From Adineta vaga (Eukaryota > Animalia > Rotifera), in the NCBI GenBank assembly GCA_021613535.1, contig CP075495.1:4960001-5024000 (forward strand): a stretch of 64,000 nt of DNA. The letters are read 5' to 3'. Each line of letters opens with the position of its first letter. Position 1 is the first letter of the stretch. A program made the translations under genes and the position numbers. This document shows, piece by piece, positions 29,329 through 42,034 of the stretch. The notes under the pieces are model-generated. The model worked only from the letters and a program-made list of their open reading frames with translations, searched no databases and was not told the origin of the DNA.

Positions 29329-30717
29329 ATGACTCTCATAAGCGATGAAACATTAGCTTTTCAACCCATCGATGACGATTCTGTCACTATGCAACCAGAA
29401 TTTAAGAGACAAAATTCACATAAACGTCAAAATTCAGATAACGACAAACAGGTATGTAAGCTTTTTCTTGATTTATACAGTTACTTCATTGCTGTAGTAA
29501 GCATTTAGCAGCGAGAGATGATAGGTAGCTATAAGTTACTAAGCAGAAAGAATCTCACTACGTAAACATTAATACGAATAATCATTATAGTCATCTAGTT
29601 AATTTCATTTTTATTTTAGTTTGTTGTTGATGATATACCATTCAAACGAGTACGTTCTTCGATAAATACAAGCATATTTGTACCATGTCCAATCGCTGAT
29701 TTCGGTTGTTTGCATGAGGTACCATCTAATGAATTAGAAGAACATTATTCAAGTTCCATTCATCAAGAATGTTTAATGAAAACGATCAATTTCTATACAC
29801 AACAATTGCATAAATCTTCTAAAAAAACAGAAGATCAATCGGAATTATCTGAGACTGTCAATGTACTTTCAGAATGTGTTTCATGTATACATGATGATAA
29901 TATCCAAATTCAACATAATGTCACTCAACTCGATAATAATATATGTACACTACAAAACCATGTTCAAACATTGAAAAGTTCAATCGATGAAACAAATCAA
30001 TATATTGAAAGTTCTCAAATGAATCAAAATGTTTTACAAACAGAAATGGAAAGTTTAAAAGAAAAAGTAACAGAACTGACTAGTCAATCATCGAACGATG
30101 GAACTTATATATGGAAAATCACCGATATTGCACAAAAGATTAATGATGCAGTTGCTGATCGTCAAACAAGTATCTATTCTCCTCCATTTTATTCATCACC
30201 CAATGGTTACAAAATGTGTATGAGATTGTATATCAACGGTGATGGTCAAGCACGAAGAACTCATCTTTCATTATTCTTCGTAGTTCTTCGTGGTGATTAT
30301 GATGCTATTTTACAATGGCCATTTTCTTTTAAAATTACCTTTTGTCTCTATGACCAAACAAATAAACAACAACATATTATCGAATCATTTCGACCAGATA
30401 TTAGATCAAACAGTTTTCAACGACCACGATCAAGTATGAATATTGCTTCGGGAGTACCACGATTTTGTCCCCTAACACACATTCAACAAGATAATAATCC
30501 TTATGTACGTGATGATTGTATGTTTATACGATGTATGGTAGAGTTTGCAAACATGCCGAAAACAATAACTCCATACGTTTTTAATCTGAATCCTGGTTTA
30601 CCAAAGAGTGTACAACAAGCAATGTATCAAGCAGAAATTGAACGACAAAAGGTAGAAGTATCCGATCCTTCAAAAAATCCACAGGAATCAACATCGAAAC
30701 TGGATACTATGAAATAA
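29329..30717 (+). CDS. TNF receptor-associated factor (TRAF2/3-like MATH domain), lacking RING; exons 29329-29451, 29620-30717
   Basis: Partial TRAF zinc finger CPIADFGC..H....H, coiled coil, MATH motifs DGTYIWKI, SPPFYSSPNGYKMC, LSLFF, WPF, SFQRP. Confidence 0.92.
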
Positions 30718-32460: not shown

Positions 32461-33672
32461 TTATGCCAATGAAATACTACTAACATCAACTAAATTTTTC
32501 ATCAAAGGTAAAAATGATGAACATGGTTGATATACTTCTAATACATGTTGTCGACTAATAACTAACCATCGATTATCAGGACTCATGGAAAAAGATCGAA
32601 TAAAATTATCTTGATTATGAAAAAGTCTTAGTCGTGTTACTTGTCCATCCGATGAAATTAAACAATGACCAATATTTACACAAGGAGTACATGTTTTGGC
32701 AAACCATTGTCCATTATTATGTAAATTAACTGGATAGAGAATATTTTCATTTGAATCCATTTGAATTCGATAGAGAAATTGATCAGTATTTAGATTGACT
32801 AAATCGATCATTTGTTTTTTACCAATAGAAATAGCAAGAGCGAGAATTTTGTTTGAATTCAAACGAATTGTTGTTACGGAAAGATCTTCTCCATGGATAT
32901 AACTACGAGATGATTGTACGAGAGATAATTTTGAAAGAGAATAATAACGAAGATCATAACCAAAAGAACGATTTATTATTAGATCATCACCATCGACAGC
33001 CATATATGATTTTCGATGTCCTTCAGTAGTGAACTAAGAAAGAGAGAAAAACAACATTAACTGAAAAGTTATTTTTTCATTCGACTAAGATCTTACTTGA
33101 ATTTGATGAATAGGAATCAGTTGTAATTGTTTCGTACTAGTTTTATATAATTGATCGGTAGTAAGAAGAAGAAAAGCATTTAATTTCGATGACCAAGCAA
33201 TTTCTTGAACATCGGCACAAGTTAATGGTAAAACGCATGTTTCAATATCCATTGTTTCCATATGAATCAATCGAAGTTGTCTACCATCAAGTAAAAGAAT
33301 ATGAGTTCGAGAAACATCAAGTATCAAACAAGGTGTATCTAATTTGAATCGTTTGATTAAATAATGATCATGTTCATCGAGCGTTTTTTCTAGACATAAT
33401 GCAGTGAAAGGTATTGGTAATGAAGATAAGGAAAGACATGTCTAATAAAGGATGAATTTGATGAGATGAAACGAAAAGATTCGTTTACTTACTTTTTTTG
33501 TTGAAATCGATAATCTTGATGATGATAATGATTTATTACCAAGTGGTGATTGTTGATCGAAAATTTGTGCACGATGAATAGATATTTTACTTTTTAATAT
33601 AATTGGACCTCCATTTTCAGTGATTCTTTTCACTGGTGATTCAGGAGGAGATGATGAATGTCTACAACCCAT
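32461..33672 (-). CDS. Hypothetical beta-propeller/WD-like protein with MGC dual-acylation start; exons 33493-33672, 33097-33441, 32461-33033 (about 365 aa)
   Basis: Clean phase-0 splicing; beta-rich repeats (QEIAWSSKLNAFLLL, SFSMSPDNRWLVIS). Confidence 0.8.
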
Positions 33673-34249
33673 TCAATTTTTTCCAATGTACTCGTTGGAA
33701 AAAAAATATATCTGAATCAGTTTTATCGATAGTTTGTAAATATAGAATAAGTAATGAAGAGAATAGCAAAAGGGATTAAAGGGATACATCCATACATTCG
33801 ATTCTATCGATGTCTGAAGTGTAAATATAAACCCTGGAATCACATGTGAATCATATTAAATGATGTCCACGATATTAGTAATAGAATTTCAAATGTAACG
33901 AATCACATGAAATAAAGAAATATCTTATACGATTAAATTAGATTCAAACACATTTATGTTCATGAAGCTTAGCTTTCCTAGAATTCAAATCGAATCCTAC
34001 TAGTTGATTCATAATTTATTTTAATCTAACATTGAAAAAGATTTGTTTTCACAAAGAAAAAAGACAACATCTTAAAATACAATTGAAACTCAATAACAAT
34101 GGTTTACATGTAATATATTCTTTCATAGATGAGAAAAGAGAACAAGACTAACGGTAATATAAAAGATGGAAAAAGTAACCTAAATATATATGACTTAAAA
34201 CTACAAAAGAATATTACATGAAACCGAACATATCATTTTTCTAACTCAT

Positions 34250-37200
34250 CTATTTCTTTCCATCTGCTTCTTTTCGTGCTTGTGCTTTAAGTTCGAGTTC
34301 TTCAAAATCTGATTTTAACCAATCAAGCATATCCGAAAAAACGACAACACCATTGGATGAAGGATCTGATACAGATGGTAATGGTCGTTGACTACTAAGC
34401 ATGTCACCATCATCATCTCCGGGTTTAATATCAATTTCTTCAGGAAACATGTCATCATCATCATCATCATATTCAAGACAATTGGATGCATATTGTTGTT
34501 GATGAATTTTATAATGATTTTTCATTCGATAAGCCGATGGAATATATTGTTTACAAATTGAACAAACACGTCGTTTCAATTCTTTTCGTACACTTGAACA
34601 ACAATAATCAAATGGTATAATATCATTTTGAGTATTTTGCATAACAACACCATGAAATTGAATACGTTGAATTAATGAACCATAGAAAACACCTTTTTGA
34701 TAATCACGATCAGCCATAGCTATACCACGTGGTGTTCGTTCAAATGGAACTGGTGCAGGAAGAAAACGATGAGGAAATACTTGAATATAGTTTGTTCGCC
34801 ATGGACCACAACATGATATGGAATTACAACGAACAATTTGAATTGTATATTGAGTTTGAAGAACATGTGTAGCACACCAATATCTGAAGAAAAGTCAAGT
34901 TTTACTTTTGATTATAACTAATAATCAATGAAATTAATAATCTTACTCATCAATATCATATTTTGGAGTATCTCGTAATAATTCACCATCGGAGTTAATG
35001 CGTGGAGGTCGAACTCTTTCTTGATAATATTCATCACTTTGATGAATACGACGTTCAATGGGTTCTTCGGCTTCTTCTTCATAGCATACACTAAACAGAA
35101 AAAGAATTGACATTTAAATCAAACTGAAAAATTCATATTTCTCTTCAAATTGTACCGATCTAGAATATGATTCATGACTACATTAACATCAACTGATCGT
35201 AATTCATCTTGCGTTGATGCTGGTGGATTAATATATTCAGCAACAACAGGATATTCATCAATAATTGATCCACACCAAACTTCAGCAAGAACTTCTCCAG
35301 CTTTTCTAAAATTTATTCGTTCTAATTCATGATTGACAGTTACACCTGAATCATTTAAATGTGTACCAAAATGATCATGAGGTAGAATAAGACCAGCTAA
35401 ATCATGTGAAAGTGGTGCCATACGTCGTTCAACAACATTATAAGCCGATTGACCTGGTGCATGTGTTAGAACGAATAGAGTATCAAGATTATATTTACGA
35501 AATTTTCGTATAGCAGCAACAAGTGTTTTAGGAAAACGAGGATTTTCATCTGGACCACCGTCAACAGTTATAATAACAATTGGTTTAACTTGACCAGTAT
35601 AATCACGAGCTGTTTTTTCAAATTCTTTTAATCCAACAAGACGATCAAAATCACATGTATGACTATTTGCATCACTACGATCATGTTTTGCTGAACGAAT
35701 TGCAATATACGTTGGACCAGAATAACCTACATCATTGTTTTCAGTCATCATACAACCAGCATAAACACTATAAAGCAAATAAATTATCAATTAAAACTGA
35801 ATCATGGACCTACCTAGGAGTTAATTGATGGCGAGGTGCAACAGTCCAATCATGATCAGGTAAACGAACACGATAATCCAAATGCATTAACATTGGTGCT
35901 TGAATTTTTGCTGCTGGTAAACCAATTGGTACTTTACATTTATCATCTTGTGATAAGAAAAAGACAACATCATTACCAAATATACCAGCTAAATCTTTGA
36001 TATAACGAATAGTTGCCGTAGCAAAATGTCCATCTGAGATTATTAGAAGAGCAGAAAAAGAAAATCATCGATTGATCATTTATGAGTTAATATTCAAACC
36101 TTCATGTTTGCTATGTTCATCATTTTGAGCTTTACGAAGTCGTACAGGAACAGTTCGAACATGTTTTTTACCATCAATAGAATTTGAACGATGTGGTAAT
36201 AATCTTCAAAAAAGAAAATCAATTGTTATTATGTATGTGTCAATATATTTCTTACCGATAATAAAGCGTTGATCGTTTGATATCGTAACCACGTTCTTTG
36301 ATTTTTTCTCGTAGATCATCCAATGTTAAACATGGTCGAATGGTTTGTGAACGTCGATTGTCATCTGCAGCACCACCAACTTTGGCAATTTCTTCAATAA
36401 TTTGTAATAAATCTGGACATTCTTCTTCGATAGGTGGTCGACCTATAATTGGTCGATAGATTTTATTTAATTCAGTTGCAAGTTCAGGATTTTTTTCACA
36501 TAATGCTTCAATTTTACGCTAGAAAGAAAGAAAAAAAACTCTTAATAATGTTTCAAACAAATATTTCTTTTACTTTTTTGATTTCACGAGCTCGTTTTTT
36601 TGCTGTTTGTTCAGCTTTTAATCGTTTTAAATCATTTTTTTTCTTCTTTTGTTCGACTAATAATTTTTTTAATTGTTTCTCTTGTTCTGTTGTAGCCATT
36701 CCCATATTTTTGACTTGAACTAATTGAATAATACGTTCATTGATTTCATGAATTTCTTTTGAAACTTTTTCTTGAGCTGGTGCACGTGTCTTTTTAGCAA
36801 GAATTTCAGCAGCTGTACGAATCTTTTCTGGTTTCTTTTTCGATTCATCTGCACCTTGTTGATCAGTTGAAGTGCCTTCTTCTTCTTCTTCTTCTTCTTC
36901 CTCTGCTTGTTGCTTTTTGTTTCCATTGATTATTTCGTTTTCAATATCGGATGATCGTGTTCGTTTCTTTCGTTTTTTTACTGTACGACCATTACTTTCT
37001 TTTTCACCATTTGTTTCCGTTTTTTTCTTACGTCCACGTTTTTTAGGTGGAGCCGTTTCACAACGATCTAAACCACATGCACTACTAGTATTATATTTTT
37101 CAAGATATTCATCAATTTTTTCTTTAACAAGAGTTTCATTCGTTTTTATTTCATTCCATTCAGTTTGAGCAGCTGTATGAGATAACTAAAGAGAAAATAA

Positions 37201-37324
37201 AAGAACATCAATCTATACATAATGGAATAAAACTTACACATCGTGTCATATCAGGATGTCCTTTCATATAAGCATCAACAAATTGACGATACAAACAGTA
37301 TCGAGGTGTTTTATTAGATGGCAT
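34250..37324 (-). CDS. Zator-superfamily DDE transposase-derived protein, 891 aa, 8 exons (37238-37324, 36574-37185, 36256-36518, 36100-36203, 35814-36033, 35156-35767, 34947-35090, 34250-34883)
   Basis: Motifs SQDDKCKVPIG, RVRLPDHDW, SGPTYIAIRSAKH, VDGGPDENPR, APGQSAYNVVERRMAPLS, C-terminal C2H2-like CSICKQY...H...H; all 7 GT-AG introns keep the frame with no stops. Confidence 0.85.
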
Positions 37325-38367
37325 TTGTAAGAATAGTTATTTATACTAGAGTAGATTTTTGCACGTACGCTTTATGTGTACGGTTGAAACTTAATAAACG
37401 TAAGAGTGAAAGAGAAAATAGATTTGTTCAGTGAAGAAAAGGAAAAAGGACGTCGCAAATCGCTTGTGACCGCTCAATGACCTCCTCCCCTCATGATTTA
37501 ATGCACGTCCTATTGCCGACCGCTATTTTTAACCAACCAGATATTAACGGACAGCATATATGAGACATGCTCTTGTTCTATTTTCTATGTAAGAGTGCAA
37601 AGAAAAAGAAGTAATTATCTATTGACCGACGTCCAGGGCAACTGTATAAAAATTCATTCTCGTTTCATCCATAGCCAATCGTCCTTTATGAATGAAGTGA
37701 TTCAATAAATATCGATTTCAAATTTGTACTACAGTTTATTTCCGCAATGTACAATTCTTCACTCTAAAGTATAATCGATCTTAATAAGACTTTCATTGAA
37801 TTAATATTTGTACGAATATGTTCTCATTGTTCAAAAGTAAAACGAACTAAACAAAGTTGAATGTACCGAAAATGATTTTAAGAGAATTTGATACTTATTT
37901 TCATAGACAATCTTTCCGTGCTAAATATATTTGTACCTTATTAACATCATATCATTTCTTGATGAAAACCTTGATCGATCGGATCACTTTGACATCTCCT
38001 AATTCAGTTATTTGATTTGATTGCATATATATATTTGTGAATACGTTCTACATGATCTATTCGTGGGAAATGATATCATGCGAAAAAAATACGATTGATG
38101 AAAATGTCTGGTTTTTAATACTAATACTATTATTTAAGTAATTGTTTTTCATGATGTTTACAACAGAATTCGATTTCTACAAAATCAATTGATAATATTC
38201 GTAAATTTCAAAATAAAATCTTGTCATTTTCTTTTACACATATGAATTGATACTGTATAGTTAAATATATGATTTGTAGGTTTGTGAAGGTCCTTCAAGT
38301 GTTATAAATATAAAATTGAAGTATAAGATCATTTATCTCTCTTTTCTTTTTTACTTAAGCAAAAGTT

Positions 38368-38952
38368 TCAAGTGTCTTTTTTCAGACATAATTTCTCACA
38401 TTGATCTTGTCTGAAAAATCGATTTGTTGTTCCACCACAACCTGAATAGATGAATGGAATACATTCACGTCGTTTAGAATCAAATGTAAAACGTTCAATC
38501 GATTTTTCACATAGACCTTTGACAGCCATTGGTGTATGACATTCAGATTTCACTATGAAAATAAAATGAAAATAATTTCAAAGATAATACTGCGTTATTT
38601 CGTTTTTCATACAAGCTCTTGTTGGTTTAGGTAAAAGACAAATTTCTTTTGTTGCACATTGAGGAAATAATCGAAATATTTCATTTTTTGTTCGACAAAT
38701 TCGTGTAAAATTCTTTGCCATCATGATTTTGGGTTTACATTGTTCCAAAGAGAATGTATCTTCCAAATGAGCTGGGATACATAAATGCCATGATGCGGCA
38801 ACACCATCGATTGTTTCATATGATTTACAAACGCCTCCAATTAACGGACAACATCCACATGGACCAACAGTATGAGTAGCAGATTTACATTGAGTATTTT
38901 CGATAAATTTTATGGAAAGACAAATACATAGTAGAAAGAATGAAGTTCTCAT
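38368..38952 (-). CDS. Secreted Cys-rich protein with C-terminal Kunitz/BPTI domain; exons 38613-38952, 38368-38552
   Basis: Signal peptide MRTSFFLLCICLS; 60-nt intron; Kunitz pattern C..GLC...RFTFD...CIPFIYSGCGG..NRF...C...C. Confidence 0.88.
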
Positions 38953-39941
38953 GTTTTTGAAAAAAATGTGCATCTATTTCGATCGGTTATAATTTCATCT
39001 TTCGATTTGACATAAAAGATGATAAGATAAAAATAGAATTGATTTCGTTCTAGTTCACTTAAATATCAACTATTGTTATTTCAATTTGAAAGTTTTTGAT
39101 GAAATTCGATCAATATAAAGATTAGATTTTGATTACAAGGAATTTACAGTCCAATCCAAGATCTCCATCTTATCTCATTTGTTAGTTTATATACAGAAAT
39201 AAGTAGGTGTATTTTTTAACTAGAAGACTCATTGATTCTCTCGAGCGACAAACTCTATTATTAATCCTATTCATCATAAGATCTTCAAGCAATCTTTCAA
39301 TATAAATAGTTCGTTTACTTTCTAGGGAAATCATTGAACAAAAAATCATATTCTTTTTTTCGAAATTAATATGTCTATGTGTGTTTTTTGTTTTTCAAAA
39401 TACATCATATTTTTCTTTTTGTTCTTCATCAACATAGAAACAAAAAGTGAAAAATAAAATCAAACACTCACGCATTAAACGCATACAAACAAAAGAAGAA
39501 GAAAAGAGAGAGAAAAAAGCGTATTGACATCATCAGTTTTATGAAATCGAAATAGACAGCAAAAACAAGAGACAGAGAGAGAGAAAGAGAAAAGAAAAGA
39601 GATCAGAAGAGAAAAAAAGAAAACCAAAATTTTCATAGCTAGTACTAAAAGCATCGTTCTATTTGGTTTGCGTATCAATAAACATACGCTCACTGTTATT
39701 ATTATTATTATTATTATTATTTTAATAACTTATAGGACAATTTTGACTAGTTCGTTAATTAAAAACAAACAAATATATCACAGTAGAAAAAAGACACATG
39801 TATATAGAAGTTCTTCTTAAATATATATTTATATATAACACGACTAGAGTCTCTTGCATAGAGAGATGAAATACATTTGTTTTTGTTAAACTAAAGGAAT
39901 AGATGATAGATTTCCTGAGAAGATTCTCTACCTAGTTGATG

Positions 39942-41971
39942 CTACACAAATATTCCACCATCAGTATCTTGTGCGCGTTTAAAAGCATCCCAAAGTGCAA
40001 CCATAATCTCTCCCATAACAACATCATTTGTATTCATTGCAATAAGACGTAAAACAAGTACACCATCATGTCGTAAATATTTGTTTGAAAATGTATTAAA
40101 TAGTTTTCGATCGAATGTTTCACGTGTTATACGATTCATAATTTTCAAATATTTTTTAAGAAAATGTTCACGATTAAACGGTAAGATTTGTTGCCATATA
40201 CAAGTGATGAAACCAATTGAAGATAATATAGAAACAATGACTAGCCAAAACCAAATGAATATGAAGATTTTCTCATTAAATAAATTCACAGGAAGCACGC
40301 ACTAAATTCGAAGAAAACAAATATATAAATGAAAAAGAAACATTCAAATTCAATCATTTACTTGTATCGTATGTTTGTGGAATGATCAGCCATCGTACGA
40401 ATTTCAAAGTCACACATTGTCACGCGAGGAAATCGCGCTGAACGACAACATTCACGACCTGATAATAGATTTCGAAGAACTTCAATACCATAACCATGAT
40501 AATTTGAACCCATAAAGATCTATATGCAAAAAAAAGCAAAGCAAAAAAAAGAGATTTCATTCAAATATATTTCTATCAACTGTTCAAAGAACTTACATTC
40601 AGTAGAAATAATTGTCCAATAACATTTGTTATATATAAAACTTTGACAAATAAATAGACAAACGTTAGGTAATTTCCTTGAGCACGACCGATAATAAAAA
40701 ATGGACAATGACGACGGAAAATACGTTTGAAATGAGAAAAAAATCCTGTTCCCATTTCACGTTGAATTTCTAGAGCACGATCAATATGTTTAGCTATATA
40801 TCTGAGTGTTCGATCTCGAATATCGGGATTTAATTGTTCCATGCTATGCAATGTTTTAACAAGATTAGCTATATCAAAACCTGTCTTTGTGGCAAGTGCA
40901 TGCCATAATACGGAGGGAATGTAGAAGAATACTGACATAAGTAATAGAATAAATGGGATCCATTGATAATAAGCTAGAAGACAAATCATTAATATTCATA
41001 AGAAAATAGATGTTAAAAACACAAAAAAGAAACAAACCAATATGTTTTGGTCGTTCATCATGTCTTGCTGGTAATGTGCTCTCAAAGGGTACATAATATG
41101 TATTAGATATCCAACAGATGTAATTGGCATATTCAACATGAGAACCTAAATACAAATAACATATTTATAGTTGATTATATTGCGATACATCATTTGATCT
41201 GTTTATTCACTTCATTTCTAATTTCGAGAAAGTTTACAACGTCTTTTTCATAAATACTTTGATGAATATTCCAAAACAAGGTCTAATACACCTTTCACAT
41301 TGTCAATTAGTAAAAAAGAGGCATAATTGTTCTTATACAAGATGTTTCCAACCTTTCATCTGATTAAATTTACTTCTATACGTCTATCAACCTCTTTAGT
41401 ATTCTTCAAGTACTTTGAATGTCTCGTCAGACTTGACTAAGATAGAAATGTCACATATTGTTAATTGCAAAAATTATATTCAAATTCTCTCGAAAATCTA
41501 ATCTTTATATGATCTTCTTTATATTAATAGTTGCTTGAATTCACAACCGATCAATTTAATTGAACAGCTTGATTACAAGACACATTCTCGAAGAAAAAAA
41601 GAAAAAACCGCAACTATTCTATTCTATCAATTTTCGAATAGAAAAAGAAAAAAATAGACGAAGAAAAAGAAGAAGCAAATCGACTATTCATTATTTTTGC
41701 ATGACGATTTACGAGCTTGCATTTTTCTTGAAAATTTTACTTCTTTTCTTTCGAAGATAGAAATGAAAAAACCAAAATACATACCGGTAAATTGTGCAGG
41801 AGCAAAACAAGCAATAGGATCACCAACGTATTGTTTCGTAGATACGACAACAGTAAATAACATAAGTAAAACAACGGAAAATCGTCGGGATAGTCGATCG
41901 TATAAGTCATCATCGTTATGAAATTTGAATTGGCGAACTTTAGCGATGGCATCGAGAAAACCCGCTACCAT
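39942..41971 (-). CDS. inx: Innexin (unc-7/unc-9-like); core exons 41785-41972, 41038-41145, 40597-40973, 40362-40519, 39942-40301; 1-nt deficit near 40381
   Basis: DDLYDRLS, QYVGDPIAC, YANYICW, YYQWIPF, FPRVTMCDF, CVLPVNLFNEKIFIFIWFW, YLRHDGVLVLR. Confidence 0.95.
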
Positions 41972-42034
41972 ACTAATAAGAATAATAAACAAAAAAAAAG
42001 AGAATTAGTCATTGTAAGAGAACCTTAAACTCAC

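What the first reader, a model, noticed from the sequence alone, without database searches (positions are those of the whole stretch)
34250..37324. Intact, intron-rich Zator transposase gene without visible TIRs: candidate domesticated transposase
Seen: 891-aa ORF over 8 exons with 7 host-sized introns (46-66 nt), no stops or frameshifts. The catalytic-type D (QDDK), D (DGGPD) and E (VERR) residues are retained, with a C-terminal C2H2-like finger and an N-terminal basic AT-hook/NLS-like segment (PPKKRGRKK) followed by a poly-Glu tract. It sits tightly between ordinary genes, and I could not find GG...CC inverted termini with a TWA target duplication in 33700-34250 versus 37330-38350. Known: these motifs typify Zator (TP36-related) transposases, whose active elements have short TIRs and 3-bp TSDs. 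Inference: an immobilised, host-retained, possibly still catalytic recombinase/DNA-binding protein. I know of no well-characterised domesticated Zator gene.
Basis: partly seen in the sequence, partly recalled or inferred. Interest (0 to 1): 0.85.

Follow-up and report, generated by a model that had tools for sequence, protein, structure and literature searches.

The report
Domesticated Zator transposase family in rotifers
A jumping-gene enzyme was tamed by the ancestor of bdelloid rotifers and kept ever since as a fixed, strongly conserved host gene family with its DNA-cutting site intact, apparently the first such case from the Zator group of transposons.

Summary
In detail: 891 aa, 8 exons, 7 GT-AG introns, triad D385/D498/E542, no TIR or TSD. 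The genome is Adineta vaga (protein UJR25996.1). Domestication is well supported. The gene has an ohnolog on homoeologous chromosome 5 with all seven introns. Its innexin-Kunitz-gene-WD-like-TRAF order is kept in A. steineri and Rotaria. Core dN/dS is 0.13-0.14 and the upstream block is conserved. It is one of nine diverged, TIR-less, intron-bearing genes in one bdelloid clade that includes Didymodactylos. Two non-bdelloid relatives checked (about 40% identity) are intronless elements with GG-ended 23-24 nt TIRs and 3-bp TSDs; the modelled core matches Mos1/Metnase. The 'AT-hook' and poly-Glu are not conserved. I found no published domesticated Zator. First readers in this scan flagged five look-alike genes in this genome.

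The parts
34250..37324 (-). Zator-derived gene, 8 exons, 891 aa (A. vaga I4U23_007343, UJR25996.1); subfamily A, ohnolog 1
37078..37306 (-). N-terminal three-helix domain (aa 7-65), inherited from the transposase; weak HMG-box resemblance only
   Evidence: pLDDT 92-97 over most of it; aligned in TE relatives; Atlas HMG hit 0.82, below the lead threshold
37024..37050 (-). Basic patch PPKKRGRKK (aa 75-83), NLS-like, not a canonical AT-hook, poorly conserved
36877..36903 (-). Poly-Glu tract in disordered linker, not conserved in most orthologues
36131..36467 (-). Putative HTH DNA-binding region (aa 251-345), 98% identical among subfamily A proteins
   Evidence: helices in the model; weak ISAzo13 profile hit to this region in paralogue P0169; HTH identity inferred
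35248..36121 (-). RNase H-like DDE catalytic core (aa 349-602)
   Evidence: Z 9.8 to Mos1 (rmsd 3.5 over 174 residues) and Metnase (3.7 over 176); Foldseek top hit Mos1
35945..35947 (-). D385, first catalytic Asp, end of strand 379-385
35560..35562 (-). D498, second catalytic Asp, end of strand 492-498
35428..35430 (-). E542, catalytic Glu, start of helix 542-552 (43 residues between D498 and E542)
34808..34867 (-). H687/C700/C705/C706 cluster, near-invariant in bdelloid and TE proteins; likely a zinc site
   Evidence: zinc binding inferred
34502..34564 (-). C2H2-type finger (C788, C791, H804, H808)
37388..37551 (-). Conserved non-coding upstream block with a CCAAT box; likely host promoter or 5' UTR
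   Evidence: 84% over 167 columns in Rotaria, 82% over 342 in A. steineri; only other genomic match is the ohnolog
32461..33672 (-). Downstream neighbour, WD-like beta-propeller gene (synteny marker)
29710..30717 (+). TRAF/MATH gene, large last exon (synteny marker)
38368..38973 (-). Upstream neighbour, Kunitz-domain gene (synteny marker)
39942..41992 (-). Innexin gene (synteny marker, collinear on C5)

Best explanation
This is a domesticated Zator transposase, immobilised in an early bdelloid ancestor and kept as a host gene. SHOWN: it is fixed, vertically inherited, TIR-less, under strong purifying selection, duplicated with the palaeotetraploidy, and part of a bdelloid-wide family with three subfamilies. 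INFERRED: it is a nuclear, DNA-binding, probably multimeric protein whose RNase H active site is still used for metal-dependent DNA nicking or end processing in a host process. DNA break handling or repair, as proposed for Metnase/SETMAR, or a rearrangement is most likely. The degenerate subfamily C proteins may act as non-catalytic partners. Domestication about 0.93; catalysis used, given domestication, about 0.6.
For: Ohnolog on C5 is collinear over window 34-62 kb, 81% identical, with 7 of 7 introns at the same position and phase; chromosomes 2 and 5 are homoeologues (PMC8494291). Synteny holds in A. steineri and Rotaria Silwood2. Core dN/dS is 0.125, 0.129, 0.142 and 0.17 against the ohnolog, A. 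steineri, Rotaria and Didymodactylos. Bdelloid proteins form one clade (SH-aLRT 99-100) and ohnolog group 1 follows the species tree. No TIRs at nine loci, while TE relatives have them. No close intronless Zator and no excess of the relatives' TIR motif in the genome. For catalysis: the triad sits on beta1, beta4 and the downstream helix (criterion in PMC5718144), and of 91 core positions conserved in TE proteins A keeps 98%, B 97%, C 68%.
Against: Conserved active-site residues can reflect folding or metal-dependent binding. No TIR-like target array was found in the genome, so no substrate is evident. Three paralogues carry apparent frameshifts in this assembly. The DNA-repair role rests on analogy with Metnase and on bdelloid biology only.
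Confidence: 0.56

Rival explanations
1. Domesticated, but working as a non-catalytic DNA-binding transcription or chromatin factor, or as a protein scaffold, as CENP-B, POGZ and Harbinger-derived ALP1 do (from my own knowledge). The triad persists for structural reasons.
For: The highest conservation is in the putative DNA-binding region and first strand (aa 251-430, 98%). The finger and zinc cluster are near-invariant. Subfamily C survives with a degraded pocket, and single members have D385N. No TIR targets were found.
Against: A and B keep the whole DGGPDENPR loop and the SAxNxVERRMAP motif as in mobile elements, while C shows these can be lost without losing the gene.
Confidence: 0.3
2. 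Domesticated as a defence: a TIR-binding repressor that blocks incoming Zator elements.
For: A. vaga lacks close mobile Zator copies, while relatives are widespread and patchy in other animals.
Against: Nine diverged genes kept since before the Adineta-Rotaria split and 98% conservation fit poorly with an arms race. Didymodactylos has both family members and a TE-like Zator (P0244).
Confidence: 0.08
3. An intron-containing Zator transposon that is still or recently mobile, or a neutral fossil whose TIRs have decayed.
For: Subfamily B copies are dispersed and not paired on homoeologues. Introns occur in a TE-like relative.
Against: Cross-genus synteny, the retained ohnolog pair, dN/dS near 0.13 at a fixed locus, and no copy above 81% identity. 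Early dispersal of B and C by transposition remains possible but is ancient.
Confidence: 0.03

Closest known systems
Zator superfamily DNA transposons (related to bacterial TP36/ISAzo13)
   Same: About 40% identity over 560-880 aa to transposase-like proteins of other animals, two of which were shown to lie in TIR elements. Same DDE motifs, N-terminal helical domain, zinc cluster and finger.
   Different: No TIR or TSD, seven conserved introns, fixed syntenic locus, vertical inheritance, strong purifying selection, extra segment near aa 606-680.
SETMAR/Metnase and other domesticated ITm transposases (pogo-derived CENP-B, POGZ, JRK; PMC7386202)
   Same: Same fold class (Z 9.8 to Metnase); immobilised host gene.
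   Different: Zator origin, no fusion to a host domain, full DDE kept, a multigene family, no multicopy TIR targets found.
Paramecium PiggyMac with its inactive PgmL partners (own knowledge)
   Same: A family of domesticated transposases with catalytically complete and degenerate members.
   Different: piggyBac origin. I know of no programmed DNA elimination in bdelloids, and no interaction between subfamilies was tested.
RAG1, THAP9, PGBD5 (domesticated, catalytically competent; THAP9 in PMC8230255, others own knowledge)
   Same: Catalytic triad retained in a host gene.
   Different: Different superfamilies; their activity is shown by experiment, here it is not.

Membership tests
Zator transposase (protein lineage) | RNase H-like fold with D, D on beta1 and beta4 and E on the downstream helix | tested here: met
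   criterion from PMC5718144
Zator transposase (protein lineage) | Affinity to ISAzo13/TP36 transposases | tested here: inconclusive
   P0162 itself has no hit. Relatives hit NF033519 at E 2.5e-4 to 9e-3, far below the cut-off. Top Atlas cluster (0.93) carries PF07592 in 12% of members; a few TE relatives carry PF07592.
Zator transposase (protein lineage) | Homology to elements with short GG-ended TIRs and 3-bp TSDs | tested here: met
   L034: 23-nt TIR, TSD ATA. L035: 24-nt TIR, TSD AGT. 39-40% identity, E below 1e-135. 3-bp TSD typifies Zator (PMC10045372).
Zator transposase (protein lineage) | Placement in a tree with named Repbase Zator elements | not testable with these tools
   No Repbase access; the founding paper (Bao 2009, PMC2727372) is not held
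Zator transposon (mobile element) | TIRs and 3-bp TSD around the gene | tested here: not met
Zator transposon (mobile element) | Dispersed near-identical copies | tested here: not met
   Nine genes at 67-81% pairwise nucleotide identity
Domesticated transposase | Orthologous position in distant species | tested here: met
Domesticated transposase | Purifying selection on an intact frame | tested here: met
   dN/dS 0.125-0.17
Domesticated transposase | Expression as spliced mRNA | tested here: inconclusive
Indirect only: an intron-free contig from run SRR22100213 encodes a full subfamily C member, and the upstream block is conserved.
Domesticated transposase | Demonstrated host function | not testable with these tools
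   Needs knockout and biochemistry
AT-hook | Conserved R-G-R-P core | tested here: not met
   The patch reads RGRK and occurs in 2 of 10 subfamily A proteins
HMG box (N-terminal domain) | Profile or fold match to HMG box | tested here: inconclusive
   No Pfam hit; Atlas 0.82 with 118 of 256 shared features

The most novel reading that the evidence does not exclude
The nine genes encode a bdelloid-specific nuclease or recombinase complex, with active A and B subunits and inactive C subunits like PiggyMac and PgmL. It would make or process DNA breaks in a host programme such as repair after desiccation, the modified germ-line meiosis, an undiscovered programmed rearrangement, or uptake of foreign DNA.
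Probability: 0.15. Interest if true: 0.92.

Novelty: new variant of a known kind. Interest (0 to 1): 0.72.

Why it matters
Zator is a little-studied transposon superfamily, and my literature searches found no domesticated member (subscription journals are mostly not covered). A family fixed before the deepest sampled bdelloid split, with a preserved active site in two subfamilies and a degraded one in a third, is a concrete candidate for lineage-specific DNA-handling machinery. Bdelloids are known for repair of shattered chromosomes, asexuality and heavy horizontal gene transfer, and the gene can be tested by knockout. The genes are annotated only as hypothetical or C2H2 proteins.

Tried and rejected
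Active or recent TE: rejected on TIR tests, copy divergence and synteny. AT-hook and poly-Glu as functional features: not conserved. Introns as proof of domestication: not sufficient, since TE-like P0244 has six and shares the one at codon 320. Pfam, NCBIfam and PDB sequence searches gave no significant hit for the window protein. A single-sequence fold of the core failed (pLDDT 36) and was not used. A genome-wide search for the relatives' TIR motif gave 4 hits against 10 for the control. Both trees are quick IQ-TREE runs with SH-aLRT support only.

Full report
OBSERVATION. The gene model is as described. On the minus strand, eight exons between 37324 and 34250 are separated by seven GT-AG introns of 52, 55, 52, 66, 46, 65 and 63 nt. 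They give 891 codons and one terminal stop. The exons were joined only inside one script to count length and stops, and that sequence was neither printed nor saved. A later search returned the database's own record of the protein (P0162), identical to every exon, and I used that id from then on. It is Adineta vaga I4U23_007343 / UJR25996.1 on a 16.27-Mb contig, the length of C2. The genome is 100.8 Mb in six contigs, so I take it to be the chromosome-level A. vaga assembly of PMC8494291.

NO TRANSPOSON ENDS. The best inverted repeat between the two flanks is at chance level: score 13, shuffle mean 11.2, reached by 13 of 100 shuffles. No GG..CC pair has a matching 3-bp duplication. None of the eight paralogues shows a TIR within 2.5 kb. 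As a positive control I read two non-bdelloid relatives. L034 (P0269) and L035 (P0260) are single-ORF elements with 23- and 24-nt TIRs that begin GGGGCC, flanked by 3-bp duplications ATA and AGT. Their TIR motif is absent from the flanks of the bdelloid loci scanned, with only 5-mismatch chance hits in three of them, and is not enriched in the genome, 4 hits against 10 for the control.

IT IS ZATOR-DERIVED. The window protein is 39-40% identical over 560-650 aa to those two transposases. Their wider kin occur patchily in Culex, Hydra, molluscs, beetles, moths and hagfish, and a few carry PF07592. Zator is described as ISAzo13-related with 3-bp TSDs (PMC10045372). Relatives hit the ISAzo13 model only weakly and the window protein not at all; Zator cores are reported to lack a Pfam match (PMC5751038). 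The AlphaFold model (mean pLDDT 74) puts D385 and D498 at strand ends and E542 at the start of the next helix, the stated criterion for a DDE core (PMC5718144). Residues 349-602 match Mos1 and Metnase at Z 9.8 with rmsd 3.5-3.7 over about 175 residues, and Foldseek ranks Mos1 first. A tree with named Repbase elements could not be built, so the family label rests on these features.

IT IS A HOST GENE. (a) Ohnolog. A copy at C5:12485.8-12488.9 kb is 81% identical and collinear with the window from 34 to 62 kb, and has all seven introns at the same codon and phase. Chromosomes 2 and 5 are homoeologues of the palaeotetraploidy. The window's left flank maps 40-55 kb further along C5 in the opposite orientation, so a local inversion breaks just 3' of the gene. 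A. steineri's second ohnolog has the C5-type neighbours, so the inversion is old. (b) Orthologues. The order innexin, Kunitz, proteasome AAA ATPase, this gene, an unlabelled gene matching the WD-like neighbour, TRAF is found in A. steineri and Rotaria sp. Silwood2 (WD-like match shown for A. steineri). The ATPase is lost from the C2 copy and kept on C5. Rotaria shares all seven introns. (c) Selection. Exon-by-exon Nei-Gojobori estimates over about 600 core codons give dN/dS of 0.125 (ohnolog), 0.129 (A. steineri), 0.142 (Rotaria) and 0.17 (a Didymodactylos family member, 544 codons). Third positions are only 10.5% G+C, so dS is probably underestimated and these ratios are likely too high. (d) A non-coding block at 37388-37551, with a CCAAT box, is 84% identical in Rotaria, above the roughly 71% at synonymous sites, and occurs elsewhere in the genome only at the ohnolog.

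A FAMILY, NOT A SINGLE GENE. A. vaga has nine full-length members at 67-81% nucleotide identity. Searches with two TE-type proteins found no intronless close copy. All bdelloid members except one TE-like Didymodactylos protein form one clade on a long stem (SH-aLRT 99-100, quick trees). Subfamily A holds this ohnolog pair, and ohnolog 1 groups by species tree (96). B holds four A. vaga genes and C three, most of them with orthologues in other species. Flanks of one C gene are syntenic in R. magnacalcarata, while flank support for a B gene is slight. Didymodactylos, sister to the other sampled bdelloids (PMC7943196), has several members, one grouping with C (98), so diversification began before that split. 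Introns at codons 29, 320 and 632 are shared across subfamilies. The TE-like P0244 shares the one at 320, so the founding element may already have had introns.

MECHANISM. Shown: fixed, conserved, TIR-less, with the full transposase architecture (three-helix N-terminal domain, disordered linker, long helical stalk, putative HTH region, DDE core, H/C/C/C cluster, C2H2 finger). Inferred: nuclear DNA binding and use of the active site. The main argument is internal. Of 91 core positions conserved in non-bdelloid proteins, A keeps 98% and B 97%, while C keeps 68%; C retains D, D and E but has lost the GGPDENP loop and other pocket residues. The pocket can therefore decay without loss of the gene, yet it has not in A and B. 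I put catalysis at about 0.6 given domestication. Since no TIR-like target array exists in the genome, structure-directed processing of DNA ends, as proposed for Metnase, seems likelier than RAG-like cutting at signals. That step is analogy only. A non-catalytic DNA-binding role is the main rival.

LIMITS. An intron-free full-length contig of a C member from SRR22100213 suggests the family is transcribed and spliced, though I did not confirm the library type. Three paralogues show frameshifts in this assembly. Monogononts and acanthocephalans did not appear among named hits, but the lists were capped.

NOVELTY. Domesticated transposases are a known kind. I found no report of one from Zator and no mention of Zator in the main text of the bdelloid TE survey, within a library that lacks most subscription papers. 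First readers of this scan flagged five look-alike genes in this genome in the same terms; those notes are unchecked and were not used as evidence. Verdict: new variant of a known kind, interest 0.72.

Noticed in passing
window 33672-34250; G000:C5 about 12485.8 kb and 12529 kb: An old inversion between homoeologues C2 and C5 breaks immediately 3' of this gene; A. steineri's second ohnolog has the C5-type neighbours.
   Followed up: partly
window 37800-38368: A 26S proteasome AAA ATPase gene lies between Kunitz and this gene in A. steineri, Rotaria and (next to the ohnolog) on C5, but is lost from C2.
   Followed up: yes
L023 near 4974, L024 near 4655, L021 near 5940: Apparent frameshifts in three paralogues; two fall at nearly the same codon (about 337-339), one -1 and one +1. 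Assembly error or recent decay; A. ricciae orthologues are annotated full length.
   Followed up: partly
L029 and L038, 10001-12960: Both A. steineri ohnologs lack the introns at codons 320 and 680 that A. vaga and Rotaria keep, which suggests parallel loss or exchange between homoeologues.
   Followed up: partly
P0034, P0271, P0088: Hagfish Zator-like proteins are 92.5% identical between Eptatretus and Myxine over 710 aa, with an altered active-site loop. Possibly an independent domestication; hagfish also have TE-type copies (P0308).
   Followed up: no
G000:C1:17822002-17823373: Distant Zator-like match (32% to P0244), outside the nine-gene family; could not be fetched.
   Followed up: no
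L019 and L016 (C5, 100 kb apart): A subfamily C gene lies near ohnolog 2.
   Followed up: no
L036 1281-5625: Didymodactylos P0244 is a TE-like Zator with six introns, cut at the contig end, weakly placed as sister to the domesticated clade.
   Followed up: partly
window 29710-30717: The TRAF/MATH exon belongs to a large dispersed gene family in this genome (many matches at about 70%).
   Followed up: no
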